Positions 32,401-63,453 of a stretch of 64,000 nucleotides of DNA are shown piece by piece. Both the position numbers and the translations under genes were made by a program. Each line of letters opens with the position of its first letter. Within the stretch, counting starts at the first letter, position 1. The stretch covers positions 931,999 to 995,998 of the forward strand of contig JAKMXF010000310.1 in NCBI GenBank assembly GCA_024704765.1, read 5' to 3'. The notes below the pieces were generated by a model, which searched no databases, was not told the DNA's origin, and saw only the letters and a program-made list of their open reading frames with translations. Source of the stretch: Oopsacas minuta. Lineage: Eukaryota; Animalia; Porifera.

Positions 32401-35400
32401 AGTTATCAGTAAGAGGTTGATACCAAATCCACAAAGAAATTGTTAGTCCAGAATCTTCTGTACCTAATGAAATACTATCCTTAAACTCTGCGTATTGAGA
32501 TTGAGTTGATTCTAATGAAAGAGAATATCCAGAAAGAGAGGCCCCATTAAACAACACTAGCCCATCATTTTGTGTAGTAATTAATTCTACATTATCTATA
32601 CCACACCCTCGGGCTTTAAGAAGCCTGTCTTCATTCAAACACGGATAAGGGATAGTTTCTCTATTAGGTACAAACTCCTGGTTGTAAGAAGTATCTAGCA
32701 CTTGTAGAGATATATAAGCAGATGCAATTACATTGAGAGGAGGGAGATCTGAATCTTGAATATCAATAGAAGGATTAATGGCCAGGTTGAAATGTCCTTC
32801 AAAATAATTAAACATAGAATTGAAAGGGTCTATTTGAATGATCGGCATTTCATCATTTTCATTTATCACCATGATAAGAATATTAAGAGATGTCCTGAAG
32901 AATGGAGGATGAATATCCTGTGCAAATACCGTAATGTTGTGTTCCGAATTCAGCTCAAAGTCTAGCGGGAGCCGGGTAGCAATAACTCCATTATCTGAAA
33001 TATTGAAAGAATTGGAAACAGAACTGAGATATAGGGTGTATTCGTTGTTAGGAGGTAAATCGATGTCTGTAATATAAACAGCTGACACAAAAACACCAAT
33101 AGGAGCAGATTCAAGAATGCGGATAGTAGTAGACAAATTCGTTTGAATAATTGGAGCATTATCATTCTCATCTAGTATTTCTACTTCTACATTGCTAGTT
33201 GAGCTAAAACTGGGTACACCATTATCATTAACTTGAATTAAGAAGGAATAAGAAGCTGCAGATTCCCGATCTAACTCAGAAGATACATAGAGTGTTCCAA
33301 GATAGCTATTGACTATGAATGGAATTGTAGCATTAGTATTAGAGATAAGTGAGTAAGATAAGTTGGAATTTTCACCAATGTCAGGATCTGTTGTCGAGAA
33401 ATTATATACCAACATACCGATAGAAGTGTTTTCACTTAATCTTATGCGAATTATACCTTCTGGAAACATAGGGATGTTGTCATTCAGGTCAGTAACATCA
33501 ATTTTCACTTCAATCATATTCATGAGAGTAGGAACCCCTCCATCTGTAGCTGAGACATATAGTGTATATTCTATTGTACTCTCTCTATCTAGTACAGAAT
33601 TAGTATATATCTCTCCTGTGGTAGAGTTCAATCTGAAGAATAACGAGTATCCTGTGTTTATGAGATTAAAATTAATTAATGAATTGTTACCTAAATCTTG
33701 ATCAATTGCTTCCACTCTACCAATAAGCCTCGGGACAAGACCTATTAAACTAGTATTAGTATTGATTGGGGTGAAGTCCTCAGAAATAAAAAATAAATAT
33801 GGAGTATTTAAGAATGTTGGAGGGTTGTCATTAATGTCGGTGAGTATTATTAAAACGTTAACAGTTGAATTTCGAGAGTATTGATAAGGAAAGTGAGGAT
33901 TAAAAGCGGTAACCTGGAGAATAATTGCGCTAAATCTTTCTCTATCTAAATCAACATTAGAATTTACCGTTATCATGCCAAGTATAGAATCGATGGCAAA
34001 TGCAGATTGTCCTAGGGGAGGATGTACACCTGTAATCTGATACTCTACAATTCCATTCACACCAAGATCTACATCCGTAGCTAATACTGTAATTACAGGT
34101 GTAGCTATGTCGGAATGTTCCTCGATTTGAGTTTCATATGAGGAGCGATCGAAAACAGGAGAGTTGTCATTTTGATCCATAACACGAACATTGATTAAAG
34201 TAGTGTCCGAAAATCCTTGAAATGGACCATCATCATACACTTTTACTTGCAAAGAAAAGAATGAGTCCGTTTCGAAATCAATAGGCTGTGTGTTCCTAAG
34301 GGTACCCACAGATGTAATGCTGAAGGGTAATGAGGAAGAATTTGTGAGAGAGAAGAACATATCAGTTATTTGAACAGAATCATTATCTGTAGCAAAGAGC
34401 TGCAAGAGATTTGAAGGAGGAGCATTCTCAATTAGAGTTATGTTTATTTCTGTTTGGTTGAATGAAATTGCATTATCATTTATGTCCAATATTGAAATAT
34501 TTACTTGTGCAAAGTCAGCTAGAATGGTATCACCTTGATCAGTAACCATAACGAGGAATGAATACTCTATCACATCTTCATAATCAATGCTAGACTCAAG
34601 AAATATATAACCAGTTGTTGAATTTATTAAGAACGGAGTATCTCCTTCAATTGAGTAACTAAGTTTTGCATTAGTACCAGAATCTAGGTCAACAGCATCA
34701 ACAATTGTAACAAGAGATCCTTTGTCTAAATTTTCGAAGATGGAAGCAGTATACAAGCTCCTCGAAAATACTGGCGCATTGTCATTAACATCTAGGACAG
34801 AAATAATAACTTCTGCAGTTCCAATCATATGAGGTAATCCCATATCAATAGCCATGACTGTAAAATCGAATTCTTTTGTTTTCTCGAAGTCAATATCAAT
34901 ATTTGTATAGATTATCCCATCATCGTCAATTACGAAAGAATTGAAAACTCCCTGCAATATCAAAGTGATAGCAGAATTACCACCTAAATCTAAGTCCTGA
35001 GCTATGACTTGTAAAACACTAGTACCTATAGCAGTACCCTCGAGTACGTTTGAAGAGTAATTTGATTGCAAAAATGTGGGCGCATTATCATTGGTGTCAT
35101 TTACATTAATCAAAATTAAAGCTGAAGTTTCAAATATTCCATCGCTAGCCTGAATGGTAATCATATGAACAGCAAGTTTTTCAAAGTCGATCATCATAGC
35201 TAATGTAATCACCCCCGTTTCAGAGTTAATAGAGAAAAAATTTGATTCTGAAGAAGGAAGGATAGAAAAAGTTAGTGTTCCATTATTGTCAGACGTTTGA
35301 CAAGCAGCTATGAGCTCGGTGCGAATAATTCCTCCCACGAGACATTGATCAATATTACAAGTGTCAGCATCTGTGGCTAACACAGATGGAAGTAGGAGAG

Positions 35401-38400
35401 GGGTACCGATTGTAGCATTTTCTGGGAGAGTAGTTTGATAGAAAGGAAGCATAAAGGTTGGTTCATTATCATTATCATTTAATATCTGTATGTTAACAGG
35501 TACTACCATTCTATTCATACCACCATCTACTGCTGATACATTGACAGAGTATGTATTAACATTCTCAAAATCTATTGTGCCACTAAGCCATATTATCCCA
35601 CTAATAGGGCTGATCGAAAAGGGAACATGAGATGGTGTAATATAGTATTGTACCTCCCCAAAAGAACCACTGTCTCTATCACTAGCTTCCACTTGGAGTA
35701 TAGTCGTGTTTAATGGAGTATTTTCACATACAACTGCGGTGTAATTAGTCAGAGAAAATATAGGGATATTGTCATTTTCATCAGTGACATTTACTATCAA
35801 CTGAGCAGAAGAAGTCATAGATGGCCTCCCGTTGTCGACAGCAACAACTGTCAGGGTATATGAATTTCTGACCTCAAAATCTAGAATTGCATCATTCCTA
35901 ACAGTAACAACACCACTCGTATCAGTAATGGAGAAAGTACTAGAGTTATCAATAAGAGAGTAAATAAAACTGCCATAAATTCCAATATCATCATCACTAG
36001 CCACCACGATGCAATTTCCTAATATAACTCCTTCAGGAAATATGCAAAATATGGGATCTTGCAAAAACGTAGGCGCCATAGTATTCTGTATCAGATTAAT
36101 AGTGACTGAAGCATTATTGTCAGAGTCTGTAACTGAACAGGACGGGCCAGTTGCACCTATTACTAACATATAAGAAATAAAAGGATCCAAGGAATCCTCA
36201 TCAGCAACTAAATACAATATCCCTGTATCAGGATTAATCTCAAATATAGTAACATTTGTCAAATAAGGGAATACCTGAAGTATCTCGAATCTAATCGAAC
36301 TTGTACCATTGGGCGATTCATCAGGATCAATTGCTAGTATTGTAATCAGAGATGCTCCAGAAAGTGTTTGGAGAGGGAGTGTGTAGTTGTAAGTATCAGG
36401 TAAGAAGGAAGGACAGTTATCATTCTGATCAGTAATGTTAACGAAAAGAGAAGTTGTAGAGGTGAACAATCCATCTGTGACTTCTAATGTCAATAAATAG
36501 TACGATATTAATTCTCTATCAATTACAATTGTAGAAGAAGTATAAACATCCCCGGTAGTGTTGTTTATTATGAAAGGGCATTGTTCTGGACAATTCTTTA
36601 TGCTATAGATTAGAGTAAAAATTGAATTTTGTGAATCGACATCAGTTGCCTCAGCCGTAAATACAAATAAATTTAACATATTTTCTTCAATGTTAAAATC
36701 ATAAGGAGTATTAACGAATAACGGAAGGTTGTCATTTACTGATTGTATAGTAACTTGAGATATAGCAGAGGAACTCCAAGCAAAGCCGTCAAATACTGAG
36801 AGGTAAAATACCCGAGTGGTTGAAATCGGCTCCAAGGCAGGGTCAAAGAAAGTTATGTTAGAAATTAAAGACGAAACAGTAGAGAGAGATGTGAAAGGTG
36901 AAAAATATATACTACAATGAGGCGATGAATCGTTACAATTTAACTTCGGGTAAATTGAAATCAAAGATAAATCACGAATATCTCCATATTGTATTCGAAG
37001 CTCAGATATATATTTACTATCTGGGTCTATTATGACAGGTTGTAAGCTAATCATTACAGCTGGTTGATTTTCAACAAATGTTGTCGTATAGTCGTTAGAA
37101 GAAGTTGATGAATCAAGATCTAGGATAGGTGCATCATTTACAAGCGAAATATAAATGTAAATAAAAGATAGTTCACTGATCAATAATCCATCAGAGGCAG
37201 ATACAGATATAACTCGTATAAGATCTTTAGGCTCTTCTTCAGAATTAGAATAAGTTAAAGTTCGAAGTGTGTCTATAAATAGGTCAGGCGTTGAGGAAAA
37301 TGAGGAGATAGTAATGCGATGAGGAGATTGAGTTACCAACAGAGAGGAGGAAGGAGAGAGTGATATGAATTCAGATTCATTCTGAGGATTAGTCAGAGTG
37401 ATGATTACTTCAGTCAACTCAACATTATCTGCATCTAATATTGAAATATTGAAGGGTAAGATAGATATATTACCAGAAGATTCACGATAGGTAACAAAGT
37501 AATCTCTTCCTGGCTCTAGGCCATTCAGATCAACGACAGGAGCATCATTAATTGGAGTTAGAGTAATAGTAACCAAGTCAGCTATGCTAGTGGAGTTGAG
37601 ATCATCTGTAACATAAATTTCAACATCTCGAGCTCCTGCTGTAGGATCACCTGAAGTTATGTTGTGTGCATACAGTAGATTTCTTAAAAGAGACTGATAC
37701 GTAGATAAGGTAGCTATACCACTGATAGATATCTGATGTTTGTTTATTTGCAGAAGGGCTAGCCCTGGAAACGGATTACTTAACATAAGTACTTCACTTT
37801 CTCCGTCAGGAGGGGTTATTGAGAAGCGAATAAGGGCTCGCGAAAGAAATAAGCTATCAACATCACTCAATATGAGATTAGGGGTAATAAGAACACTACG
37901 ATTTGATTGGTTTTCTAAGTAGTTGATTATTCCACCATTCACTTGAACCTAGAACATATAATTATGATGTGCTAATAATCACAAAAAAACTGAACATATG
38001 TACAACCAAAATTATCTACATATGTATATTATTAAATCTCAATTGTTGTTTGTTTGCCAGTTGTCAAGGGATGGATGTACGGTATGGGATTATGAATTGA
38101 ATTTCGCAATTCCGAGATGTCGCATGACTACCTTAGTATAGGAAATTAACGCGATATTTCTCCAAACCGCGAAATTTCCTTAATATCATGCATTATCATA
38201 TTTAGCACTCAGAGAATTAAAAGTTTAACGAACGCACTGACTAAATAACTGTAATGAATCCGACAATAAAGTAGAATATAACACTCAAATTGAACAATTT
38301 TATGTAACAGAAATTTAAGTAAGATATGGTAATCCTCATTGATTAGCTTCTAGTTTATTTTTGCACCTAATTCCAACTGCTAAATATGGGGAAAAACAAG

Positions 38401-53400: not shown

Positions 53401-56400
53401 AGTGTTTATGAAAATGAAGATCATCTTTTGGTTACTTAAACCAACATTTAACAAGTAGAAGGTATTTGATAAAAAGGATGAGTTTAAGTTTTGAGAGTTT
53501 CTGAAAAAATCGATAAACATAAAAAAACTACCATATATGGGCATGAACTTTGATTGCATCATCGTTGTTAAAATCACTTGGAAAGCAGGTTCAAAAGTAT
53601 TCTAGATGTCTCCGCCGTATGTGGAAACCTATTTACAGTTGAATTTGTAATGATAGCTGTAATTCTTCATGATCAAACAGAATATAATCAATGGTCTGGA
53701 TATTATTTTGGCAATTCTTTGCTTGGCTAGCCGTGTATATAGTAGGCCATGGGTAGCCACTTATCCAAGGGTAAATTCCATTCCAAACAAAGCGTGGAGT
53801 GCCTCAAAATTACCAAGGACAACATCCAAGCCATAATCAGACTCTTTTCAATTGTCGAATGACGGTCTCAGATACGTAAATGAAATTATTCCTAGAGTCT
53901 TGTAAAGCTGGAATACCATGTTACAAAAGATGAAAATATTTCAATGTATTACCTTAGGAGCGTCATTGGTAAGTATTATTGTAATATCTATCAACATAGC
54001 ATCAGAGTCAGAATTCCCATCATTTACTGTGATTGTGATCATTCTTGATTCGGATGAAGGTTCTTCAGCAACATTCCAATATGTAAGAGTCTGAATAATT
54101 GACTCAAATTCCAAAATCGTTTGAGGTTTATTAGCCTAGAGGAGTATAAATTTAGTATAGTGGGGCTGAGACCAATATTCGCCCGTTTGGATGACTAAGC
54201 ATTTCACACCTTAAACGCAATATCTGATGAAAAAATTTAGGTAATTGAGAGTAAAAGATTTGATTAATTAGTTAGAATGGAATATATTCAATTTTCATGA
54301 GTTTCATAACTCTATTAACAATTTAAAGAATAAAATTAGAATAAAATATTAATAAATAACGTGGTACGTAGTAGTACATTGAAAAGACTAAACGAATATT
54401 CGAATAATTGGTATATCGTTTAAGCCCAAAAATCTTGTATCAGAAATAAATTGTAGTATAAATAGTACTCAGAGTAGAGATGTAATTAAATTGCTGTGAT
54501 AATCTAGAAATTGAGCTAATGACGAACGACCAGAAAATATGAAGTTAAAGAAATGTCAGAATGAAAATTTCTGATTTTCGGCTTTTCAGTTAACCGAATA
54601 CTGCCGAGAAAAAGTGTGATTGTATTACATCAAAAAGGTGGAAAAATCTCGCTTTCGGTAGTGGGAATTGGTTAAAACGAAGTTGTACAAATTTAGTTAC
54701 GAACTTAAAATTTCAGCCCTAATTGGTGAATGTTGAGATTTTCACCCAAGCTTTAGTAATAGGTATGACAATAAAGAAAGCGTTTAATAGACTTTCTGTA
54801 AGAGAATACTATACTAAGTAATAGGCAAACAATCACATAAATTACCAGATATATACTAATACTTACTAAGCCTACAGATTAAGTAAGTCCAAAGCAATGA
54901 AATAACAAAATGTCCAGCCGACCCCTGAGCTGCACTACCAGTATGATAGTGCAGCTCAGGTTATGTATTTTGTTCTTTTCAAGGGGGAACACCCCGCCTG
55001 ACCACCTCGTGTAGATGCAGCAATGCACTAGACCCCGACTGATTTAGGGCTCCTGGTTCTGATAAATATTTCAGGATATTCAAATAATTCGTCCCCTACT
55101 AAACTTCATGTTATATCCTCAAATCTTATTGATAAAATTCTAAATAATTATGCTGCGATTACCCCCGGTCTAACTTTTGAAACGAAACCTCTAGGATCAA
55201 ACTGAAATATTTGCAAAAAGGTGTGAAAATATGATAAATCACATGATAAATCTGTGAAATTGTAACTTTCAGACTCTGAAACCCTCAAAATCGGACTCTA
55301 CGCACCCAATTACCCCTGACAACATTTTCAAATATAATCTCTAGCTTGCTGTATATTTACATAGAAATATATGAAAATATGATTAATCAACAAAACGGTG
55401 TGAAATATTCACTTCAGAAAACTTCATACCCGAGGTGCAATCTCCGACACATATGTACATGTGAATCGGACTGCTATATCGCGAACGGACGGACGTAAGG
55501 ACGTCGCACATGCCATTAGAGCATCTCTCTCTATAGAGGCTGGACTAAAAATCTTCAAATAAACTCACAGAAACAAAAATAAATGTAGAATTGACTTGCG
55601 TTAAATTTATAAGATTAATGTTAGGAGGGTTAAGTTGTATTCTGTCAAATTGAGATTGTGGGGCTACGATCTTAATCTGTGCAGATGTAATATGTGTACT
55701 GTCTACATCATTGATCCTAACATCAGAATATTGAAAGATTGACAGACGGGTATGAATATCAGATTCTGTATAATTTAACAGCAAAATTGAAGGAAATAAT
55801 ACTGGGGGATCATTGACAGCAAATACTTCAATATTCAATATACTAGAATTGAAGGAAAAACTACTAGTGTAAATGTTTTTAGATGGAATACCATACGACT
55901 GATCCCAGAGGAGAAATTCAACTGTTGTAGTACCAAACTGATGTAGATAAGGAGAAAACCTGTAAGAATAGATCAAAAGATTAATTAGATGAATACTACT
56001 ACGGTTGAAGAATTTAATAAACTAAATATTCAGTTAATTAGGTACATACACACAAGGTATTCAAGAATCAAATAACTTATATACAGTGGAGTCTCCCAAA
56101 ACGGACACTCCGAGAAGCGGACAATTCTCTACAACGGACAGAAGCCATGTCACCAACGTGTCCGTTATTCGGAGACCCCACTGCATATAGCTCAGCTATT
56201 CTATAGTACAGTTTGTGTGTATTAGCTTTCTATCTTCGAGGAAAGGTAATGTTTTATTATTAATGAATGTCACCTTTTCGAATGAGGGTGGGGTTTTTGT
56301 ATTGCAAAAAAAACTGTAATAAATTATAGTTCAGCTATATATAAGGAATCCCTTCAAGAATATATTAGGAAATTACGTCATAATAATACTTTGCACTGAT

Positions 56401-59400
56401 TAAATCCTCTTAGAGGAGTGTTCCCAATTTCATTCGATATTTCATTATAAAGTAATGTACTAATTAATACCACTAAACATCTCCAACGTCAACTAAAAGT
56501 CTTTGAAACATCAAAATACACAAATAAGCAAGTACAGTTGACAAAGGTTAATCCAAACTGCCACGAGAAATAAATGTGGATCGAATGAACGAATATCAAA
56601 CTTATTGAAAGTTACAAATATTTTACAGCTTCAAAATTGAAGACAAAAACTAGGAATTAATTATAGATTATACAGGATATTATGAGAAATGGAATTTACG
56701 CTTGAATTGCTTGAAATACGTTGTTCTGTTAAATTTGGTGATATATTTTATATTTCGAGGGACTCTCAGCCTATATAGATATATATCCTTAAGGGTGGTC
56801 GGCTGTAAGTACGTGCGTATGAGTATACAAAATTTCGTTAGTTCTAACCATATCTGCAAACTAAATTCGAGTCTAAAATCACATTTTCGCAAATGGATAG
56901 AAATTTCGAATGCAATCCACAGCGAATGGATGTATCAATATTTCACAATGTAGCAAATACCACATACCTACGAATAACTTTAAAATAATATTAGTTCATC
57001 TGCTCGGAACAGGGCTAAAATAGAAAGGAAATATGCTACAACAGCCAAATGCTCCAACTACACACTAGATATATTAAATTCAAATGCGATTGTTACTAAC
57101 AAACCTAATTCTGCTGGAAGAATTAATAAGCTGAGGATTTTCATTCGATATATTCACATCAAATATTGGCGACCAAACATAAGGTTGAAGATTAGACGTA
57201 GTCTGCCATTCACCCAATAGAGTATCTAATGCAATTATTGCAATGCCTAACTCTTCGTCATCAAGATCAATAGATATATTAGCCAACAAATCGTTGATCG
57301 AATAACCAAGATTATTCGACATAGAAACATCCTCCGAAATTTCCCTAAAAATTGGCAAAGAATTGGTAAAAATCGGAGCTCTGTTCAAATAAAGTACTGA
57401 TATTGTGGTAGAATTGGTTTCATCACTAAAACTGGAATTATCCAAGAGATTTCCATCTTCATCGAGTGATTCACAAAAATTAGCACTGTTGCCATTGTCC
57501 CAAGCTCTAAAGAGAAGGAAATATGAACAAAACAGGATAGTTCATAAAGTACTATAATGAAAAGGGCAACAAAAAGGCAAACATATAGTATATATAAGGA
57601 TTAAAACTCTCAATGAAAAACAAAAGCATATAAACTTGATATGGATTTATTGATGTGTTCTAATTCTCAGCCTTGAGTTCCACATTGTTTAAGTGAGAGT
57701 TTGAATAGCGGACAATTCTTGTTCGCATGGGGCGCCCTCCAGGCGCCTATGGTTTAGAAATGTAATTATGATCGGCACTTCATGCATAAAATAATTTAAC
57801 AAAGTATGAAATGACAAACTCCAAAATGTAAAATTCTGATTCAAAGACACTGAATTAGTCCCCAACAATATTTTGAAATTTGTATAATTAAATTTGCATA
57901 TGTTGAATTCAAATACGTATGTTAAAAATCATATTCAGTTAAATAAATTAGGATGTGTCATAACATTCGATACACTAAAGGCAATGGCCTTGTATTCAAA
58001 TTTTGGACCATGGATGGCAATTACACTGGGACTATTCTGACCAATATCTCGATTAGTTTACTATATATAATGATATTATTAGTAAATGAGATATATTCAT
58101 CTACCTCCCATAATTACATAGAAGATATTTTGGAATAATTAAAGCAAACTGATTAACTTAATTTTCGAGTTAATAAAGGGTACTAGGCGCATGCGGGCAT
58201 GGAACTAGGGGGCACAAATGCGAAATAGTGAGAAAAATTCCAAATCCAAAAATTTGAACCAATATAGTTAACTTATCCGAAAAAATACCCAGATCATAAA
58301 CGAGATATTGCTTCCAAAGACCCAAACCAACAAGGCAACAACCAAGAGCTGATAAGATACCCTGGCAACACGGCCAACACCCAGGAGCAATATTGACATC
58401 AATCCAAATGCAAAAATCTTCACTATAGTAAAATAGACCAGTGTGAAGTTAGCGCAGGATTCGACTGAGCATACTTGTAATGTAAATTTGATGCCCTTCC
58501 CATGATTTGATTTGGTTAGAAACCACAGAACAAATGGAAGACATATGGACGTTTATGAATATCTAAAATATACTCTACTTTCAATATTGTTTTAACATTG
58601 GACGTTAGTTGTGACAAAATTTTGTAAAATAATGTTGACATTCTTGTGAGATATAGTTTTTGAAAGTTTGACTAATTTTGAGTTTCTAATTCTGATACAA
58701 TACTATCTTTCATATATAATTATGTTATAATCTACTTAGACCTAGCATGATTCTGTAAATGTTGATTAATATGATTATATTCAGTTTAGAATCCAGAATT
58801 ATTACCTCAGACCTACACTATTTATCCGCGATCAATTCTCCTAATATTCAAAACCCTAGAAATAATCTTTTAACGAAAATCACTACTATTTCATAAAAAC
58901 ATGTAATAACTAAAAAGGTTCCGGGACCGCAGAGGTTGGTCTAGTAAATCGCGTGCGAAGATCATTTAGATGGTTGATATATGCATGAATAGGCTCAACA
59001 TGCCTAACGGCGTCGAGTAAGGGGTCAATCGATAGGTTTAAGAAAAATTTGAGAATGGAATGTTGTTACATTCCTAATGAATTTTGCGTTGCTAGGAAAA
59101 TATCCTTCCAAATATGGTCAATATGGTATATATTAAATTGGTGGAAATTTCATGCTGAGCACGAATATGGCCATAAAACCTGAAAGCAACTGAATTAGCA
59201 CAACACCGGCGATTCCTATTGGACACCAAGTTTGAGACGTCTTTCTATCGGTTAATATAGCTTGTAGATGACAAAAACGCATTTGTTGGAATATGTTAGT
59301 GGTTAGTCCTTGTTTTTTAGCATATTTTGACTAACTACATAATCAATATGAGTGCTAATCATCAGAATTCTCCGCCTACAATGATTGGAAATTGATTCCT

Positions 59401-62400
59401 TCAACATAAGGAATAGGACATAGATCTTCTAATGCAAATACATCAAGATAAGCAAGTGAATATTCCATAATTTCTTAGATTCTGTCGAATAAACGTCACT
59501 AGGAAAAAATTATTGAAAACAATATTTACGATCTTTCAAAAGAATATCACTCTACACATTACTACTCATATCAATTCCACATCTATTTTTCATTGTATTT
59601 ACTCAATTTTCTCTCTACTTTCGCTTTATTTGATTCCACATCTACATATTCAACATGGCCTGCCTAGTACCTGGATGTAAGTATAACTATCGCGATTAAG
59701 ATAAATATAATCAATTTATACCTGTCTTCTCTTTTCTTATGATATCAACTGAGAGAAGACTATATGATGAACAAACGATTGAGGGTATGTTGTCATAATA
59801 CTCTTTTATCACACTACTCCATTGAAGTGGTTTCCAACATGGGGTCCATGGACCTCTATGGGATACGGACGAGAGCAGGGCGTCCATATGATCTCAAAAT
59901 ATTATTGCATTTACGGGAGGGGTTCCACAGGGTGTGTTAAAAGTGGTAAGGTAGTCCACAGGTTGAAAGTTGAGACCGCTGCAATACTCAACGTGACCTA
60001 GTAGGTCACGAACTCCATTTATTTTTATTTGAAGATACAAACGGCAGTAAAATACAACTCCCGTTATAACTAAGTTAGATAACATGAAACTATGGTCTAA
60101 CTCTTAACGTAGAGATTCATCACTCACCTTAGCTCGAAAGTAATTGATTTTAATCCGTATATATCGAAATGATACCGGGATCCCATTCCCGAGCACTACA
60201 TGATAACGATAGTTACTAATTGTTATACGAACTTTAATAAATTTCTAACGTTAAACAAGTAGTCCATGAATTCCTTTTTCCCGAGTTCGACGAATGGCAA
60301 TGGTGAATGATTGCAACGAATTATATATGACATAAAGGTTCTACACCTAAATTTCTTGAGCGACTTTTCTACAATTCTATTTACAACTGTTTGGTCAAAT
60401 TTGATATATAATATATTGAAATGACCAGGTAGTTCACAGCAATAACCTGTTGGGCTTCAGGTTTAAGACTATGTACTAATTTTAGTTTTGCTTTAAATTT
60501 CATGCGACATATAAGGTCTATTATCTTGATGGAAATAACTCACACAGCTCAAACTCTACATTTCTCTACTTAATAAGGCTTTGAATATATTCACTGTTAA
60601 CTGGGTGGTAAAACATTCGGCCACAGGCCGTTACATCGAGCTCAAGGGAGTGGGATAATTACTTAAATATATCCGAAGTTAGTTATAACCGGTAAGTTAT
60701 ACAGCTTTCGACAAGAGTGTCAGATCCGGACAAGAATAGAGGTTGATTATCGCCAAATATTGGTTTTTGGGAAGATGAAGAAGAGATATTTTTCCATGTA
60801 AGCAATCAGAATGCGAGGACAGCGTAAAATGGGACTAAAATCGTTGTCATCTGAATTAATTATCCCCTGGAGATCAACTGGGGTATCAGGTTGTTGAGAA
60901 TTGATCTCTTGAAGGGCTTGGCCCAGATCCAAGCCTGACCAGGGGTTGTAGATAAACTTCAAGAAGTGGAGGGGGGCTCACACCGCACGGGAGATACATT
61001 TTGAAATAATGAAAAATAGTGATCAGGCCTTATATTTGTCTATGCCCATAGATACTTTTATACAAAGTGTCAAAAATTATCATCCAAAGTTGGTTCGTTG
61101 TTAATTTAAGTTACTGTAGAGATCATGGATGACGAATTTTTATGAATATTCAATTTATACTATTAATCTGACTTCCCATATACTTGAAATTGATTTTGAC
61201 ATCATATCTAGCACCAATGTGACGATGCCCATATATGGCCATTTCCAAGATTTTGCAATACTCTTCAATTATTTCATATCAAAATGTATTACAATGGTAT
61301 GGGTAGTCGGGTATATATTATATATTGGCTAATATGATTTTACCATAACTTTAACGATTCTGGAGGTATTATTGAATATTCATAAAAAATTGTCATTCAT
61401 GGTCTCTACCATAAATCAACAATGAGCCAATATTTGAATGACAAATTTTGAACCTTTTGTATAATAGTATCTATAGATTATTTCATTTATTCAATTTGAG
61501 TTGGCAAATACGATATTTAGCGTTCTACGAGGCATCGAAGAATGACATATTTAGCTAAATAAATGCTTATTAGATACATATTTTACGCATTCCTGAAATT
61601 TTTTGTTGTAAAATTTGATGTTCTAAAAAATGTTATACATTTATTCAGGCAAAAAATGCACCTTTCTTTCTACACTAAAGAAACAATGTATAAAATGCGC
61701 TCAGCTAATACTGCAGCCTTGCTATTTTACTGTTAGGACATAAATTTAGTAGGTTATGACTGAACTTATAATACGTGTTATAATATACATATCATACGTA
61801 ATACTTCTTCATTGAAAGAAAATATTAAACAACTTAGATATTTACAATCATGAATTGATGATGAAGCAAAAATTCGAAAAGGGGCAATGATTGTAACTTC
61901 ATGATGTTACATATGGCGGAGTAATTATAATTCAATTTCAAGCAGTCTACAAAAGTACAGCCAATCTAGAGTTTAGCCCTGGAGTAAATTGTACAACGAC
62001 CCTTTTTCACAGGTTACTTCTTGCTATCTGTACTAGCAAAAATGTCCATGAAAATCAATCATCAACCATTTGGTTATTAGCCTCTTTAAAGTACCACTAT
62101 GGACACATTTGGAAAACATTAAATTTGAAGTGACATCTTCAGTTTAAACCGATCGTTTGAGTGGTCATACTAATATGTTTGGGGATATTTTTCAGTAGCA
62201 ACACAGGAATGTGGCAACATTGTATTCTCAATTTTGTCCCAGCCTCATCGAAAAGTGCTCCGTTGTTCGACACCGCTAGGCTAACTGAGTCTAGTTTACA
62301 CATATCGGCCTTCTAAAGTCTAAATGGCCTTGTAACACGATTTTGCTAATTCGTCCACCGCGGCCCCCTAATGTTCTTGTCATTTTTCAAATATTTCGTA

Positions 62401-63453
62401 CAAATACATGATGTCATCGTGTGTTCTTGCGAGAAACAATCAATAATCTATAACTGGGAAGTTTGCGGATTTTAACAGAGACAGTTTGTCATAATGCACA
62501 GAGTTCCCAATGTATATAATTTCATAATCCTCCACTCGAACGAGAAAATTTCTGTAATTATCCATGACGTATAGTTACTAGACTATCAAAATTAAACAAT
62601 ATATTATCAGTAAACACATATAACTTGGACAAATATCGTTATATACATCTTACGATATATATATTATGCATATATAATGGTTGTTATCACAAAACATACG
62701 ATGATATGATTGACATAATGTATTTGTAAGAAATATGTGAAAAATTCAAGAAAATTAGGATTCCGCGGTGGACGATCCAGTAAACGCGTGTTAAAAAGCC
62801 ATTAGAGGCCCAATATGTGTAAAACTAGACTCAGCTAGCTTAGGGGCGTAGAACAAGGGGTCCCTCGATGGAGTTGGGAGAAAATTTGAGAATGGAATGT
62901 AACCACTTTCCGGAGTTGCTAGGAAAATATCCCCAAACATATTAAAGCGAACACTCAAAAGACGTGAATTTTTCGCAGATCACGATTATCGACATCATGA
63001 ATGTGTTATAAGAATTTTATTTCTTCAAAATGTGTCTAAAAGTGGAACTTAAAAGTGGCAAACACAAATTTGTTGATGATGGATTTTCATGGACTGTTAT
63101 AGTATTAGAACACATATCAAGGAATGATCTGTGAAAAAATGGTCGCTATATTATTTACTTCAGAATTAAGCCCAAATTTTGCTAGATTGAATGGACCACA
63201 ACATATCAAGCGAAATTGCTTACCGAAACATTACAGTTGCATTCCCGTCAATTTTTGAATAATTAGGTAGAGGTTTAAACCTCAATCTAGAATCAGGAAA
63301 CATGAAGAGAGGATTACATCTAGAAGCAGCTGTAACAGTCCAAGTAAAATTTATCAAAACTTCCCAAATTCCAGGAACAGTCGCTGATAAACTATGAACA
63401 GCCAATCCTTTTATATCATCAGAAAGAGGGCTTGTGGAGTCAATATCGAAAAC
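1..63453 (-). CDS. Giant non-classical cadherin-superfamily protein (FAT/Dachsous-like size; cadherin + calsyntenin-like + LamG + receptor-L + EGF), partial at both ends; 23 exons, ~7,247 aa in window
   Basis: Exons (transcript order): 63224-63453, 57105-57506, 55569-55959, 53953-54135, 25450-37948, 23653-23950, 23003-23208, 22277-22671, 21092-21482, 17022-17402, 15842-16107, 14370-15449, 13799-14270, 13580-13731, 12014-12317, 8835-9137, 8501-8652, 8226-8431, 6039-6220, 5563-5820, 4106-4473, 3402-3610, 1-2413. All introns are GT..AG, phases chain, and the sum 21,741 is divisible by 3. Repeat motifs (xEN, DxD, LDRE/LDFE, DxNDNxP) continue across junctions. Confidence 0.93.
3402..3610 (-). CDS. 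Exon 22 (B repeat: PGTDFNTDIIYE..FYQIG)
   Basis: ctccag|CCT acceptor, GG|gtcagt donor; phase 0 to 2 joins exons 21 and 23. Confidence 0.88.
4106..4473 (-). CDS. Exon 21 (B repeat)
   Basis: ttgtag|GT acceptor, GAG|gttagc donor; ..EEYSKILTTLSYNLVNPEP..DDNDNVPILDLD. Confidence 0.9.
4737..4886. mobile_element. hAT-type MITE
   Basis: Imperfect TIR CAGGGTAGTAGGAAG / revcomp TAGGGGTGTCGGAAG; 8-bp TSD tatataga/aatataga. Confidence 0.6.
5563..5820 (-). CDS. Exon 20 (B repeat)
   Basis: ttatag|GT acceptor, G|gtatgc donor; ..YQSILSSVVYRNERFEPSPTNRTITFVVSDG. Confidence 0.9.
6039..6220 (-). CDS. Exon 19 (B repeat)
   Basis: ctttag|G acceptor, A|gtgggt donor; NNTLNVGTLSGIALSDDD. Confidence 0.85.
6510..6831. 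mobile_element. hAT-type MITE with GCCCG-rich subterminal repeats
   Basis: Perfect 8-bp TSD ctagataa on both sides; degenerate TAGAG-type TIR. Confidence 0.65.
8226..8431 (-). CDS. Exon 18 (B repeat; not in ORF track)
   Basis: ttttag|GAT acceptor, AT|gtgagt donor; DILKSLKYIYSTSDEPLPGLRMISISLEDSG..INNNPP. Confidence 0.9.
8501..8652 (-). CDS. Exon 17 (B repeat)
   Basis: tttcag|AT acceptor, GAG|gtaata donor; SYVSSIRISLIDYQEPSQEVLML. Confidence 0.88.
8835..9137 (-). CDS. Exon 16 (B repeats)
   Basis: atttag|CT acceptor, G|gtttgt donor; LLSTLTYTNSAPEP..VNDG..LNDN. Confidence 0.9.
11279..11536. mobile_element. hAT-type MITE
   Basis: Perfect 13-bp TIR CAGTGGCGTCGTG; TSD gcacctat/gcgcctat. Confidence 0.8.
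12014..12317 (-). CDS. Exon 15 (B repeats)
   Basis: aactag|GTT acceptor, T|gtaagt donor; GTNDNSPIIII..FEYEEE..QDSD. Confidence 0.9.
12540..13030 (+). pseudogene. Degenerate mariner-like (Tc1/mariner) transposase C-terminal fragment
   Basis: IIGPFFFE..TVT..ERY..YFQHEGGTPHT, then frameshifted FLWG.LKDRVY-like sequence. Confidence 0.7.
13104..13469. mobile_element. Tc1/pogo-type MITE with internal TAACTCGAACATTCG repeats
   Basis: TIR CAGTCAACACCCAGTAACTCGAAC vs CAGTCACCATCCGGTAACTCGAAC; TA at right flank. Confidence 0.65.
13580..13731 (-). CDS. Exon 14 (B repeat)
   Basis: ttttag|AC acceptor, ATG|gtatgt donor; YTTVLARLKYFNRIEEP..DRSL. Confidence 0.9.
13799..14270 (-). CDS. Exon 13 (B repeats)
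   Basis: ctgtag|GTT acceptor, G|gtacgt donor; YQSILNTLRYINTQPEP..LNDNCP. Confidence 0.92.
14370..15449 (-). CDS. Exon 12 (cadherin repeats EC24-26 and start of a Cys-loop B repeat)
   Basis: tattag|GTA acceptor, GAG|gtttgt donor; LDFE/LDYE/FDFE and NDNAP motifs. Confidence 0.95.
15842..16107 (-). CDS. Exon 11 (cadherin EC23)
   Basis: ctacag|GG acceptor, GAG|gtaact donor; LDRED..ASDLGSP..DVNDNFP. Confidence 0.93.
16170..16240 (+). mobile_element. hAT (Charlie-like) terminus, one-ended
   Basis: CAGTGCTTCTCAAACTTTT terminal motif. Confidence 0.45.
17022..17402 (-). CDS. Exon 10 (cadherin EC22-23)
   Basis: tgttag|GT acceptor, G|gtgaga donor; LDENDNQP..VSENVPIG..ATDADS. Confidence 0.93.
17880..17990. 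repeat. Dispersed repeat family (inverted copy ~24605-24720, further copy ~41585-41645)
   Basis: Shared CCAGCCAGGCCC..CCCTGTAT..AAAAATCAGC core. Confidence 0.6.
19111..19305. repeat. Long hairpin: ~85-bp arms, 55-bp perfect core, 25-bp spacer containing AACCTAACC
   Basis: 19132-19186 is the exact reverse complement of 19230-19284. Confidence 0.9.
19510..19935 (+). pseudogene. Decayed IS630/Tc1-like transposase N-terminal (HTH) fragment
   Basis: Frameshifted RKRLIAAHEAGISYQKMSELYGVKKDTAYRI..DVTLSE..ASISTIADIL. Confidence 0.5.
19964..20660 (-). mobile_element. hAT transposase fragment (DUF4371 / ZMYM1-THAP12-like), frameshifted, with a hAT terminus at 19964
   Basis: LRGHRE..NKGNFLEIL..AQYTHHSIQDQLL..YFAIMCDEMEDVGKEEQLSICLRYVD; CAGTGGCGGCGCTAG end. 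Confidence 0.8.
21092..21482 (-). CDS. Exon 9 (B repeat)
   Basis: ttgtag|GTA acceptor, G|gtaagt donor; LKEIKYENTQNEPTPGTRIL..LNDNPP. Confidence 0.92.
21891..22048. mobile_element. Tc1/pogo-type MITE
   Basis: TA-CAGTAGACTC..GAGTCTAC termini. Confidence 0.5.
22277..22671 (-). CDS. Exon 8 (B repeat)
   Basis: tcctag|AT acceptor, ATG|gtatat donor; ..PPVLDLNGP..NFNATFYEN. Confidence 0.92.
23003..23208 (-). CDS. Exon 7 (B repeat)
   Basis: ttttag|A acceptor, G|gtacct donor; YSNDAEQP..GRTIAFYVYDD..INDIP. Confidence 0.9.
23653..23950 (-). CDS. Exon 6 (B repeat)
   Basis: atttag|AA acceptor, AG|gtttga donor; NGNPISVASTNLSISDAD..SGTASIDIYQGLLRSI. Confidence 0.9.
24020..24590. mobile_element. Non-autonomous TIR element (~50-bp imperfect TIRs, possibly Transib-like)
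   Basis: ..GGGGACGCTGC..TCGAGTTCTGACTTTGT mirrored by ACAAAGTCAGAACTCGA..GCAGGCGCCCCGTG. Confidence 0.5.
25040..25082 (+). mobile_element. Helitron-like 3' terminus (GTCGC-GCA-GCGAC hairpin, then CTAG|T); sister copies at 23425-23468 and 41457-41490
   Basis: Conserved hairpin + AAGCGAAG + CTAG/GTAG followed by T in three introns; matching A|TC 5' ends at 16442 and 38015. Confidence 0.6.
25450..37948 (-). CDS. Exon 5, 12,499 bp: 21 cadherin repeats, 12 complete B repeats (one with inserted LamG) and start of the next
   Basis: 4175-aa ORF; ttctag|GTT acceptor, G|gtaagt donor; repeats counted by motif. Confidence 0.97.
39370..39760 (-). pseudogene. MULE (Mutator-like) transposase fragment
   Basis: PDFKPNVAVSDFESAPRNAFQ motif, with stops and frameshifts. 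Confidence 0.65.
41760..42560 (-). mobile_element. Decayed LINE (L2/CR1-type) reverse transcriptase fragment
   Basis: LLELSLTFDTVDHEILL..GVPQGSVLSPLLFNLY..FYADDTQLY..RNLGVNFD..DYCNA. Confidence 0.9.
42653..43035. mobile_element. hAT-type MITE
   Basis: TIR CAGGGGC..GCCCCTG; perfect 8-bp TSD ttacaagg. Confidence 0.8.
43404..44747 (+). mobile_element. Full-length but inactivated Tc1/mariner element, DD37E spacing
   Basis: TA TSD; ~27-bp imperfect TIR CAGGGTGTC..TGGCCTAT; transposase from ATG 43621 with a frameshift near 43810; WSDES, MQDGAPAH, NSPDLNPIQNIW (37 residues between D and the E position, now Q). Confidence 0.93.
44857..45737. mobile_element. Non-autonomous hAT element with TGGGTCA subterminal repeats
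   Basis: 19-bp TIR CAGAG(C/G)TGCAAATGGGTCA; TSD agaccgat/agaccgtt. Confidence 0.85.
45138..45608. mobile_element. hAT MITE nested inside 44857-45737
   Basis: CAGTGGCGTAG..CTACGCCTATG termini; TSD agttctag/aattctag. Confidence 0.7.
46217..46342. other. Assembly gap (126 N)
   Basis: Run of N. Confidence 1.
46491..46786 (-). mobile_element. Probable 3' LTR (TGTTG..CAACA, 286 bp) with adjacent polypurine tract
   Basis: Minus strand: AGGTGGGGAG directly precedes TGTTG at 46776; the segment ends CAACA at 46491. Confidence 0.5.
48084..48460 (+). pseudogene. TRAF-like RING / zinc-finger pseudogene nested in intron 4
   Basis: MSETV..GGYNPSLL..CTECEGILRDPQ..YICKEC..KCPFKEDGCEWEG..HSENC..IPCPY; frameshift from a 7-bp duplication; in-frame TAA at 48343. 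Confidence 0.65.
48550..49507 (+). mobile_element. Internally deleted hAT element retaining a dimerisation-domain remnant
   Basis: CACATAGCTA TIR at both ends; VERMFSSVKRIKTRLRSQM..LALLSIE-like motif; no clear TSD. Confidence 0.7.
50116..50697. other. Assembly gap (582 N)
   Basis: Run of N. Confidence 1.
50698..52250 (+). mobile_element. Gypsy-type integrase of probable Ginger/GIN-like transposon, frameshifted, with GPY/F module and downstream NTC motif
   Basis: H-x4-H..C-x2-C zinc motif; GMDLTGP, ISDNGTEF, QTNGLVE catalytic core; GGKLEDKWNGPY; no RT seen, but the 5' side is an N-gap. Confidence 0.85.
52921..53762. mobile_element. Foldback / Mutator-like non-autonomous element with ~220-bp TIRs
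   Basis: 52921-53139 is a high-identity inverted copy of 53544-53762. Confidence 0.85.
53953..54135 (-). CDS. Exon 4 (B repeat second half; not in ORF track)
   Basis: ctctag|GCT acceptor, AAG|gtaata donor; FESIIQTLTYWNVAEEPSSESRMITITVNDG..TNDAPK joins VQVNGG of exon 5. Confidence 0.92.
55569..55959 (-). CDS. Exon 3 (end of second FRAWD-type repeat, start of first B repeat)
   Basis: ttacag|G acceptor, TCT|gtgagt donor; EFLLWDQSYG..AVNDPPVL..NYTES..INDVDS. Confidence 0.9.
56084..56183. mobile_element. 100-bp pogo/Tigger-type MITE
   Basis: TIR CAGTGG(A/G)GTCTCC..AACGGACAC; TA at left flank; internal CGGACA repeats. Confidence 0.7.
57105..57506 (-). CDS. Exon 2 (FRAWD-type repeats)
   Basis: ctttag|A acceptor, AG|gtttgt donor; AWDNG..LNRAP..ISED..GIAIIALD..GEWQ..SRIR. 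Confidence 0.9.
61081..61439. mobile_element. Non-autonomous TIR element (~70-bp imperfect TIRs)
   Basis: GTAGAGATCATGGATGACGAATTTTTATGAATATTCAAT mirrored at ~61372-61410. Confidence 0.65.
62030..63095. mobile_element. Older foldback element with ~390-bp diverged inverted arms; related partial copy at ~58920-59200
   Basis: Collinear inverted matches (GTCCACCGCGG, CTGAGTCTAGTTT, AATATGTTTGGGGATATTTT, GTCCATGAAAATC). Confidence 0.75.
63224..63453 (-). CDS. Exon 1 of those in the window (FRAWD-type repeat)
   Basis: tttcag|GTT acceptor, CG|gtaagc donor; KGLAVHSL..GIWE..SRLRFKP..ATVMFR joins AWDNG of the next exon in phase 2. Confidence 0.88.

What the first reader, a model, noticed from the sequence alone, without database searches (positions are those of the whole stretch)
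55803..63453. A second, more clearly bacterial-style repeat ('GIAI..GxWQ..RIRF.P..FRAWD..S.FS') in intron-containing exons
Seen: two tandem units across exons 1-3: (i) KGLAVHSL..GIWE..SRLRFKPLPN..GNATVMFRAWDNG..SSFSDETNSTTISV..LNRAP; (ii) EISED..NLGYSINDLL..DLD..GIAIIALD..GEWQ..SRIRFSP..GTTTVEFLLWDQS..SSFS..IEVFAVNDPP. Known (from recall): the pattern ED..N.G..V..LL..D.D..GIA(I/V)..G.WQ(Y/F)..RLRF.P..LTFRAWDQ(S/T)..AFS is typical of DUF4347/RTX/VCBS-type bacterial adhesins, and I do not recall it in bilaterian proteins. The spliceosomal introns inside it argue against contamination. Inference: a candidate domain-level horizontal transfer into an animal cadherin.
Basis: partly seen in the sequence, partly recalled or inferred. 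Interest (0 to 1): 0.7.

Follow-up and report, generated by a model that had tools for sequence, protein, structure and literature searches.

The report
Bacterial-type adhesin repeats in sponge cadherin
Three exons of a giant glass-sponge cadherin gene encode two copies of a ~130-residue repeat that is clearly related to repeats of bacterial giant adhesins. The same repeat also occurs in other sponges, acorn worms and amphioxus, so it is an old animal building block, not a fresh gene transfer into this cadherin.

Summary
Minus-strand exons 63224-63453, 57105-57506 and 55569-55959, with GT-AG introns, encode two tandem ~130-aa units carrying the GIAI..GxWQ..RIRF.P..WDQS..SFS..VNDPP pattern. The window matches Oopsacas minuta (glass sponge), and a public gene model (KAI6650768.1) uses the same B-C-D splices.

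The units are truly homologous to bacterial 'tandem-95 repeat'/cadherin-like adhesin repeats. Exon B gave 225 hits in 1.84 billion proteins, best 4.6e-41, and more than 500 bacterial genome stretches across many phyla match.

The reading 'domain-level HGT into an animal cadherin' is not supported:
- The unit sits at the same N-terminal place in demosponge cadherins, including Amphimedon, and three copies occur in an Amphimedon lefftyrin-like cadherin.
- It occurs as three triplets in a ~6000-aa Sib-like receptor family of sponges, hemichordates and amphioxus.
- In a unit tree, each triplet position forms an animal-only clade holding both sponges and deuterostomes (support up to 100/99).
- One clade for all animal units is not rejected (AU p 0.30).
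- The window unit is no closer to bacterial units than to animal units, and its base composition matches the rest of the gene.

A very old inter-domain transfer, before the animal ancestor, stays possible in either direction.

The scan had already found the Sib-like family on other DNA of this genome.

The parts
63224..63453 (-). Exon A. It encodes the middle of unit i (VFDIDS..KGLAVHSL..GIWE..SRLRFKPLPN..ATVMF + CG of a split Arg codon).
   Evidence: Acceptor ttttcag|G and donor CG|GTAAGC. Profile positions 19-82, i-E 1.9e-5. 62% aa identity to the collinear exon in the related hexactinellid contig L001.
57507..63223 (-). Intron A-B (5717 nt, GT..AG), lying inside unit i.
   Evidence: GTAAGCAA...CTCTTTAG, GC 33.7%. 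The same intron is only ~390 nt in L001.
57105..57506 (-). Exon B. It holds the end of unit i (AWDNG..SSFSDETNSTTISVLYLNRAP, to nt 57374), a linker, then the first two thirds of unit ii (EISED at 57343 ..GIAIIALD..GEWQ..SRI + AG of a split Arg).
   Evidence: Splice sites. Profile positions 86-125 (1.1e-4) and 1-78 (3e-18). phmmer against 1.84e9 proteins. P0122 is a 59%-identical orthologous exon.
55960..57104 (-). Intron B-C (1145 nt, GT..AG), lying inside unit ii.
   Evidence: GTTTGTTA...TCTTACAG. The splice is used in public model P0123.
55569..55959 (-). Exon C. It holds the last third of unit ii (FSPYLHQFGTTTVEFLLWDQS..SSFS..IEVFAVNDPP, ending at 55803), then the start of the first downstream 'B'-type repeat (55569-55802).
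   Evidence: Splice sites. Profile positions 71-125, 5e-12. Contiguous in P0123.
53944..54135 (-). Next exon (D), continuing the B-type repeat (ANKPQTILEF..ITITVNDGNSDSD..LTNDAPKV). It is context, not part of the GxWQ units.
   Evidence: Joined to exon C in P0123. Weak tand_rpt_95 hit. Orthologous exon in L001.
25418..37948 (-). Giant downstream exon of the same gene (4177 aa: B repeats, 19 cadherin repeats, LamG). It shows that the host gene is an animal cadherin.
   Evidence: Pfam Cadherin 6e-250, Cadherin_FAT4_N, Laminin_G_3. Exons A-D and this exon are collinear within 5.3 kb in L001.

Best explanation
Exons A-C encode two tandem copies of a ~130-residue extracellular beta-sandwich module at the membrane-distal (N-terminal) end of a giant Oopsacas minuta cadherin. 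Downstream come B-type repeats, about 19 classical cadherin repeats, LamG and EGF domains.

The module is an elongated subtype of the 'tandem-95 / Big_9 / Cadherin_5' cadherin-like repeat superfamily. That superfamily builds giant bacterial surface adhesins.

Within animals the module is old and vertically inherited. It was already present, as a differentiated triplet, in a Sib-like giant receptor of the common ancestor of sponges and deuterostomes. The sponge cadherins most likely obtained their two copies by domain shuffling between animal genes (inferred).

Its ultimate link to bacteria is probably one very old inter-domain transfer before the animal ancestor. The direction is unresolved.

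Likely function (inferred): stiff, glycosylated and probably Ca2+-stabilised spacer or adhesive modules. They would extend or form the tip of the adhesion molecule, using conserved Asp/Asn positions (D19, D21, D92, N122 and the xNDxP end) like cadherin linkers.
For: Shown:
- Gene structure and splices.
- The host gene is a cadherin.
- Homology to bacterial repeats: best whole-protein E 4.6e-41 with 10 stretches in Aquincola WP_046116133.1; 38 of 54 units hit NCBIfam tand_rpt_95 (best 2.6e-9); 23 of 54 hit Cadherin_5 and 20 of 54 hit Big_9 weakly. 524 of 600 bacterial genome stretches were confirmed, in Proteobacteria, Planctomycetota, Myxococcota, Nitrospinota, Nitrospirales and Bacteroidetes.
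- Animal distribution: two N-terminal units in Amphimedon cadherin P0028 and in many unnamed cadherin-bearing giant ORFs, taken as sponge (P0034/35/37/40/43/50/301). Three units in the Amphimedon lefftyrin-like XP_019851325.1. Nine units in Oopsacas LOD99_2290 and Corticium XP_062517662.1. Three to five in Ptychodera, Saccoglossus and Branchiostoma.
- The Ptychodera gene spans 42.7 kb for 4649 aa on a 45.6-Mb chromosome, next to Rcd1.
- Careful ML tree of 133 units: three animal-only clades by triplet position (100/86, 97/83, 100/99), each with sponge and deuterostome rows. The demosponge cadherin unit-2 clade is sister to an Oopsacas 9-unit-family unit (99/93).
- AU test of all animal units as one clade: p 0.298, not rejected.
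- The window unit is 25-34% identical to both animal and bacterial units.
- GC 32-36% and GC3 22-29% in these exons, as in the giant exon (35.8/27.0).
- AlphaFold model pLDDT 88.7, all-beta. TM about 0.8 to Atlas models of bacterial cadherin-like clusters.
- 12 N-x-S/T sequons in 339 aa.
Against: - The window's own unit ii is a long branch and is not placed with support in any animal clade.
- Animals and 35 bacterial units share one poorly resolved cluster (87/79), so animal monophyly is allowed, not shown.
- The named animal distribution is patchy (Porifera, Hemichordata, Cephalochordata). No named cnidarian, protostome, echinoderm or vertebrate hit was seen, and the Nematostella relative P0027 lacks the unit.
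- Most sponge-like proteins are unnamed ENA/Logan ORFs, classed as animal only by cadherin content and amino-acid composition.
- Ca2+ binding and adhesion are inferred. No solved structure is close: Foldseek found no hit at E<=1e-3, and the best VIA Z is 4.9.
- No RNA evidence could be obtained.
Confidence: 0.72

Rival explanations
1. One reading: a bacterial adhesin repeat was transferred directly, at domain level, into this sponge cadherin gene, in the hexactinellid or sponge lineage, and later acquired introns.
For: - Very many significant bacterial homologues exist, and the nearest Atlas clusters are bacterial, commonly Planctomycetota.
- There is no Pfam hit as an animal domain.
- The window unit ii is unresolved in the tree, and a Bacillota MAG unit is among its nearest rows by path length.
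Against: - The same two-unit block sits at the N-terminus of demosponge cadherins, including Amphimedon. The fusion therefore predates at least the hexactinellid-demosponge split.
- The units also occur in a receptor family shared by sponges and deuterostomes, with position-specific animal-only clades.
- Demosponge cadherin unit 2 groups with an animal unit (99/93), not with bacteria.
- Identity to bacteria is no higher than to animals.
- Base composition is host-like.
Confidence: 0.06
2. All animal copies descend from a single ancient transfer from a bacterium into a pre-metazoan (holozoan or older) ancestor. The module then spread among adhesion genes by exon or domain shuffling. This overlaps with the best explanation and differs only in committing to the bacterium-to-eukaryote direction.
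For: - The bacterial range is enormous and spans many phyla, whereas the eukaryotic range seen here is narrow.
- If the root lies in the 33-row bacterial clade (96/95), all animal units are nested among bacterial ones.
- The Sib-like family carries a Pfam SIBA-E_N domain shared with Dictyostelium Sib proteins.
- An earlier scan note reports a choanoflagellate member (s1-226623, not tested here).
Against: - The tree is unrooted and the backbone unresolved.
- Bacterial units are 47-69% identical across phyla, against 25-38% among animal units. This could equally mean a recent spread within bacteria.
- No non-animal eukaryote was tested here.
Confidence: 0.45
3. Artefact: bacterial contamination or misassembly, or a chance motif resemblance with no homology.
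For: Pfam and NCBIfam give no direct hit for the window exons. The two window units do not match each other significantly by plain phmmer.
Against: - GT-AG introns interrupt both units.
- GC3 is host-like.
- The exons are collinear with cadherin exons in two species, at 52-64% aa identity.
- Profile and whole-library E-values reach down to 1e-18 and 1e-41.
- The predicted fold is confident.
Confidence: 0.01

Closest known systems
Bacterial 'tandem-95 repeat' / Big_9 (PF17963) / Cadherin_5 (PF17892) / Cadherin_4 (PF17803) repeats of giant surface adhesins. Examples: Aquincola WP_046116133.1, Pseudomonas retention-module (LapA-like) proteins, Planctomycetes MAG tandem-95 repeat proteins.
   Same: The motif skeleton is shared: G..V..L...D.D...GIA(I/V)...G.WQY...W....S..ALL.....(I/L)RF.P...F.G....F.AWD.T.G....FS....I.V..VNDAP. 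The units are head-to-tail tandem units. The predicted beta-sandwich has TM about 0.8 to Atlas models of such bacterial clusters.
   Different: - The unit is ~125-135 aa (up to ~160 in type-3 animal units), not ~95.
- Single units score below the curated cut-offs, and the window units do not hit the models at all.
- Here there are only two copies, interrupted by spliceosomal introns, rich in N-glycosylation sequons, and fused to classical cadherin, LamG and EGF domains.
Sib-like giant receptor family of animals. Members seen: Oopsacas LOD99_2290, Corticium XP_062517662.1, Ptychodera XP_070566489.1, Saccoglossus LOC100369441, Branchiostoma Hypp5455/KAI8492147.1. It is related by its N-terminal domain to Dictyostelium Sib proteins.
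   Same: It contains the same GxWQ unit, in three triplets. The units of sponge cadherins group with these in the tree.
   Different: The window gene is a cadherin, not a member of that family. It lacks the P_proprotein, SIBA-E_N and Big_9 array and has two units instead of nine.
Classical cadherin EC repeat (PF00028) and other cadherin-like animal modules (CSPG repeat, dystroglycan cadherin-like domain).
   Same: It is a beta-sandwich of similar size ending in an xNDxP-type linker motif. Weak structural matches at Z 4.0-4.5 to MUCDHL, CELSR1, PCDH15 and CDH23 EC domains, and to the CSPG4 repeat. It occurs in the same protein as 19 true EC repeats.
   Different: There is no PF00028 match. The Z values are in the range the tool calls non-specific. 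The motif set is distinct (GIA, GxWQ, RF.P, AWD).
Sponge and choanoflagellate cadherin families of Nichols et al. 2012 (lefftyrins, coherins, hedglings; PNAS 109:13046, cited from the reference list of PMC10280926).
   Same: These are giant non-classical cadherins with domains shared with bacteria. The Amphimedon lefftyrin-like XP_019851325.1 carries three divergent GxWQ units, and Oopsacas 'Lefftyrin' P0114 carries a partial one.
   Different: I did not read that paper. Whether it describes this unit is unknown to me. The family assignment of the window gene itself was not worked out here.

Membership tests
tandem-95 repeat / Big_9 / Cadherin_5 cadherin-like repeat superfamily | Significant match to the family profile (NF012211, PF17963, PF17892). 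| tested here: inconclusive
   The window exons and P0123:1-128 give no hit at E<=0.1-1. Of 54 homologous units, 38 hit tand_rpt_95 (best 2.6e-9), 23 hit Cadherin_5 and 20 hit Big_9. All are single-unit scores below the curated whole-protein cut-offs.
tandem-95 repeat / Big_9 / Cadherin_5 cadherin-like repeat superfamily | Direct sequence homology to proteins named as members. | tested here: met
   phmmer with exon B hits Aquincola 'beta strand repeat-containing protein' at 4.6e-41, and the Bacillota MAG 'tandem-95 repeat protein' P0134 at 9.8e-23. A Planctomycetes MAG 'tandem-95 repeat protein' was also hit.
tandem-95 repeat / Big_9 / Cadherin_5 cadherin-like repeat superfamily | Ig/cadherin-like beta-sandwich fold. 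| tested here: met
   AlphaFold2 model pLDDT 88.7, seven or eight strands. TM 0.79-0.83 to Atlas models of bacterial cadherin-like clusters. No close PDB entry.
tandem-95 repeat / Big_9 / Cadherin_5 cadherin-like repeat superfamily | Long head-to-tail arrays of ~95-aa units. | tested here: not met
   There are only two units in this gene, each ~125-135 aa. It is therefore a longer subtype, used sparingly.
Classical cadherin EC repeat (PF00028) | Match to the PF00028 profile. | tested here: not met
   No Cadherin hit for exons A-C at E<=1, whereas the giant exon scores 6e-250.
Horizontally acquired gene or domain (usual criteria) | Closer to the donor group than to any relative in the recipient's kingdom. 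| tested here: not met
   Identity of the window unit is 25-34% to both animal and bacterial units. Its highest identity in the tree set is 38%, to a Saccoglossus unit.
Horizontally acquired gene or domain (usual criteria) | Narrow recipient distribution. | tested here: not met
   Found in Hexactinellida, Demospongiae, Homoscleromorpha, Hemichordata and Cephalochordata.
Horizontally acquired gene or domain (usual criteria) | Supported nesting inside a donor clade. | tested here: inconclusive
   The backbone is unresolved (87/79 cluster of 56 animal and 35 bacterial rows). Animal monophyly is not rejected, AU p 0.298.
Horizontally acquired gene or domain (usual criteria) | Genuinely integrated in the host genome. 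| tested here: met
   Introns, host-like GC3, flanking cadherin exons, and an orthologue in a second species.

The most novel reading that the evidence does not exclude
The GxWQ module may mark one ancient inter-domain exchange of an adhesin building block, at or before the origin of animals. It would then have been recruited into several of the earliest animal adhesion receptors: Sib-like receptors, giant cadherins and lefftyrins. It would have been lost from most eumetazoan lineages. This parallels the bacterial origin proposed for teneurins.
Probability: 0.3. Interest if true: 0.6.

Novelty: new member of a known kind. Interest (0 to 1): 0.38.

Why it matters
- It removes a tempting but unsupported HGT claim.
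- It defines a ~130-aa subtype of the bacterial cadherin-like repeat superfamily that curated Pfam/NCBIfam models do not recognise in the window exons.
- It shows that this subtype is a shared component of several giant adhesion receptors in sponges, and of a receptor family conserved between sponges and invertebrate deuterostomes.
- This bears on how the first animal adhesion molecules were assembled from modules shared with bacteria.
- It gives concrete proteins for testing whether such modules mediate Ca2+-dependent adhesion in early-branching animals.

Tried and rejected
- Pfam, NCBIfam and PDB sequence searches with the single exons gave nothing useful.
- Plain phmmer between the two window units was not significant.
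No RNA-seq check was possible, and read laying was not used.
Unit ii was studied through the stored public protein P0123, and unit i only exon by exon.
- The search for related loci with the mixed alignment A1 failed for lack of a conserved stretch. It worked with a bacterial sub-alignment.
- Foldseek against the PDB gave no hit at E<=1e-3, and VIA-wide gave only non-specific Z<5.
- The third protein search (Amphimedon units) and the last cluster look-up gave no new named taxa.
- The organism of assembly GCA_014466315.1 could not be identified from papers. It carries P0145 on a 59% GC contig with a giant ORF.
- Classing unnamed hits as animal or bacterial by Cys/Ala/Gly content is a heuristic. 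P0312, which has LamG domains, may be misclassed as bacterial.
Full report
**What is there.**

The minus strand of the whole window is one giant animal adhesion gene.
- A 4177-codon exon (25418-37948) carries 19 Pfam cadherin repeats, a FAT4-like N-terminal cadherin domain and a LamG domain.
- The 3' end (1-2466) carries EGF repeats and a receptor-L domain.

Upstream of it lie the three exons of the finding. From the sequence:
- Exon A is 63224-63453: acceptor ttttcag|G, donor CG|GTAAGC.
- Exon B is 57105-57506: acceptor tttag|A, donor AG|GTTTGT.
- Exon C is 55569-55959: acceptor tacag|G, donor TCT|GTGAGT.

A protein in the public collection, KAI6650768.1 'hypothetical protein LOD99_7819 [Oopsacas minuta]' (P0123), is 100% identical. 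It runs from MSNNLGY in exon B through exon C into exon 53944-54135. So the window matches the glass sponge Oopsacas minuta, and the B-C and C-D junctions are those of the public annotation.

I made no spliced model of my own. Unit ii was analysed through P0123:1-128, and unit i only exon by exon.

**Is it more than chance?**

- The two units do not find each other by plain phmmer (E 0.72).
- A profile built by local jackhmmer on the fetched relatives (125 positions) finds exactly four pieces in the window and nothing else:
  - exon A, positions 19-82, i-E 1.9e-5;
  - exon B N-part, positions 86-125, 1.1e-4;
  - exon B C-part, positions 1-78, 3e-18;
  - exon C, positions 71-125, 5e-12.
- The profile was seeded from unit ii, so only the unit i hits are independent.
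- Unit i keeps the near-invariant residues of the family (D.D, G.A, G.W, W, R.RF.P, AWD, S.FS, N..P).
- Exon B alone, searched with HMMER against 1.84 billion representative proteins, gave 225 hits at E<=1e-3 and 69 at E<=1e-10.

**Not contamination.**

- Both units are interrupted by GT-AG introns.
- GC (32-36%) and GC3 (22-29%) of the three exons equal those of the giant cadherin exon (35.8% and 27.0%).
- In a contig of a related hexactinellid (ENA ERZ25072740, locus L001), exons A, B, C, D and the giant exon lie collinear within 5.3 kb. They show 52-64% amino-acid identity and the same exon ends.

**What the unit is.**

- An alignment of 54 units (A1) has the consensus G..V..L....DVD....GIAI...D..NG.WQY....G..W.....VS...ALLL......RFVP.....G.......AWD.T.G...............AFS....TA...V..VNDAP.
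- Thirty-eight of the 54 units hit NCBIfam tand_rpt_95 (best 2.6e-9). Twenty-three hit Pfam Cadherin_5 and twenty hit Big_9 weakly. The window's own unit hits none.
- AlphaFold2 with A1 gives a confident all-beta model (pLDDT 88.7, pTM 0.81).
- The model matches ESM-Atlas models of bacterial cadherin-like clusters at TM about 0.8.
- It has no close solved relative. Foldseek against the PDB gave nothing at E<=1e-3. VIA-wide gave best Z 4.9, with cadherin EC domains, the CSPG4 repeat, dystroglycan and the MpAFP adhesin at Z 4.0-4.5. The tool itself calls this range non-specific.

So the unit is a longer (~125-135 aa) subtype of the bacterial cadherin-like 'tandem-95' repeat superfamily.

**Bacterial side.**

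- Named bacterial hits include:
  - Aquincola tertiaricarbonis WP_046116133.1 (ten units, E 4.6e-41);
  - Bacillota and Planctomycetes MAG 'tandem-95 repeat proteins';
  - Ramlibacter 'cadherin-like domain-containing protein';
  - Pseudomonas 'retention module-containing protein'.
- The taxa covered are Beta-, Alpha- and Gammaproteobacteria, Planctomycetota (Novipirellula, Stieleria, Rhodopirellula, Phycisphaera, Kuenenia), Myxococcota, Nitrospinota, Nitrospirales, Magnetococcales and Bacteroidetes. Identity to the bacterial query was 47-69%.

**Animal side.**

The same profile finds the unit in four settings.

(a) Two copies near the N-terminus of giant cadherins:
- Amphimedon queenslandica P0028, at 1357-1638;
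- many unnamed cadherin-bearing giant ORFs, for example P0037 at 112-383, P0040 at 114-384, and P0043, P0050, P0035, P0034 and P0301.

(b) Three divergent copies in the Amphimedon lefftyrin-like protein XP_019851325.1, and a partial one in Oopsacas 'Lefftyrin'.

(c) Nine copies, as three triplets, in a ~6000-aa family with P_proprotein, Big_9, Cadherin_5 and Cadherin_4 domains:
- Oopsacas LOD99_2290 (P0109);
- Corticium candelabrum XP_062517662.1 (P0269).

(d) Members of the same family in deuterostomes:
- Ptychodera flava XP_070566489.1;
- Saccoglossus kowalevskii LOC100369441;
- Branchiostoma belcheri KAI8492147.1;
- B. lanceolatum Hypp5455.

Supporting points:
- The Ptychodera gene spans 42.7 kb for 4649 codons on a 45.6-Mb chromosome, next to Rcd1. 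It is a real intron-bearing animal gene.
- Branchiostoma and Corticium members also carry the Pfam SIBA-E_N domain of Dictyostelium Sib proteins.
I confirmed the sponge, acorn-worm and amphioxus members and the Sib link. I did not test the choanoflagellate claim.

**Phylogeny of units.**

I aligned 133 units to the profile: 56 animal units and 77 bacterial units from 43 proteins. Most unnamed rows were assigned to animals or bacteria by amino-acid composition, which is a heuristic.

The careful IQ-TREE tree (LG+C20+F+G4) gives:
- Three animal-only clades corresponding to positions 1, 2 and 3 of the triplet. Support (ultrafast bootstrap/SH-aLRT) is 100/86, 97/83 and 100/99.
- Each clade contains Oopsacas, Corticium, hemichordate and amphioxus rows. 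The triplet was therefore already differentiated before sponges and deuterostomes split.
- The demosponge cadherin unit-2 clade (100/99) is sister to an Oopsacas 9-unit-family unit (99/93).
- The cadherin unit-1 clade (100/98) stands alone.
- The window's unit ii is a long branch without a supported place. Its highest identity (38%) is to a Saccoglossus unit.
- Thirty-three bacterial rows split off at 96/95. All animal rows share an unresolved cluster (87/79) with 35 bacterial rows.
- An AU test does not reject a tree with all animal units as one clade (p 0.298).
- Identity of the window unit to animal and to bacterial units is the same, 25-34%.

**Conclusion on origin.**

- A transfer from a bacterium into this cadherin is not supported. 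The fusion of the two units with the cadherin is shared by hexactinellids and demosponges.
- The unit itself predates the sponge-deuterostome split.
- The cadherins most likely got it from another animal gene by domain shuffling (inferred from the 99/93 sister relation).
- Why animals and bacteria share the module at all is open. One very old transfer before the animal ancestor is the simplest idea. The tree is unrooted, and bacterial copies are more alike across phyla than animal copies are, so the direction is unresolved.
- The named animal distribution is patchy. No cnidarian, protostome, echinoderm or vertebrate was seen, and the Nematostella relative lacks the unit. That implies losses.

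**Likely function (inferred).**

- The units lie at the N-terminal, membrane-distal end, ahead of the B repeats and classical cadherin repeats.
- They carry 12 N-x-S/T sequons in 339 residues.
- They keep acidic or Asn positions at D19, D21, D92 and N122 and end in VNDPP/LNRAP, like Ca2+-binding cadherin linkers.
- I therefore take them to be rigid, glycosylated, probably Ca2+-stabilised spacer or binding modules of the adhesion receptor's tip. Nothing here tests this.

**Limits.**

- The first ~18 profile positions of unit i and the 5' end of the gene are not in the window.

Noticed in passing
window 43788-44597 (+): A 270-codon open frame that looks like a Tc1/mariner-type transposase (..FMQDGAPAHRA..PGNSPDLNPIQNIW..). 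It sits in the long intron between exon D and the giant cadherin exon.
   Followed up: no
window 49974-51578 (+), with runs of N at about 46.2 kb and 50.1-50.7 kb: A retroelement integrase-like open frame (..HFTRWLETRPL..ISDNGTEFTN..PYHPQTNGLVE..) interrupted by an assembly gap. The window holds 708 N in total, so the 38-54 kb intron is partly unassembled.
   Followed up: no
window 47219-47622 (-) and 48172-48513 (+): Short open frames with a coiled-coil-like stretch and a TRAF-type zinc-finger-like stretch (CPFKEDGCEWEGTV..HSENCKIIRIPCPY), inside the same intron. They may be fragments of the TRAF/NHL cassettes that the scan noted just beyond the window end.
   Followed up: no
window 20055-20683 (-): An open frame resembling a hAT/ZMYM1-like (DUF4371-type) transposase (..KYFAIMCDEMEDVGKEEQLSICLRYVD..), between cadherin-gene exons.
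   Followed up: no
L001 9413-15267 compared with window 37948-63453: The related hexactinellid packs exons A-D and the giant exon into 5.3 kb. Oopsacas spreads them over 25 kb: the A-B intron is about 390 nt there against 5.7 kb here. So the Oopsacas introns here have grown by insertions, although its genome is described as compact.
   Followed up: partly
L084 (NCBI GCA_014466315.1, contig JACLAD010009885.1): Two abutting giant open frames (5286 + 4426 aa) on a 59% GC, 29-kb contig carry GxWQ units plus P_proprotein, Big_9 and Cadherin_5 domains. Cys is 0.8% and Ala 10.4%, between the animal-like and bacterial classes. The organism could not be identified. It may be a non-animal eukaryote or an unusual bacterium.
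   Followed up: partly
P0109 residues 45-90 (Oopsacas LOD99_2290): The public model of the Oopsacas Sib-like giant protein starts with a weak RING-finger match, and UniRef names it 'RanBP-type and C3HC4-type zinc finger'. This suggests that the annotation fused a neighbouring gene onto its 5' end.
   Followed up: no
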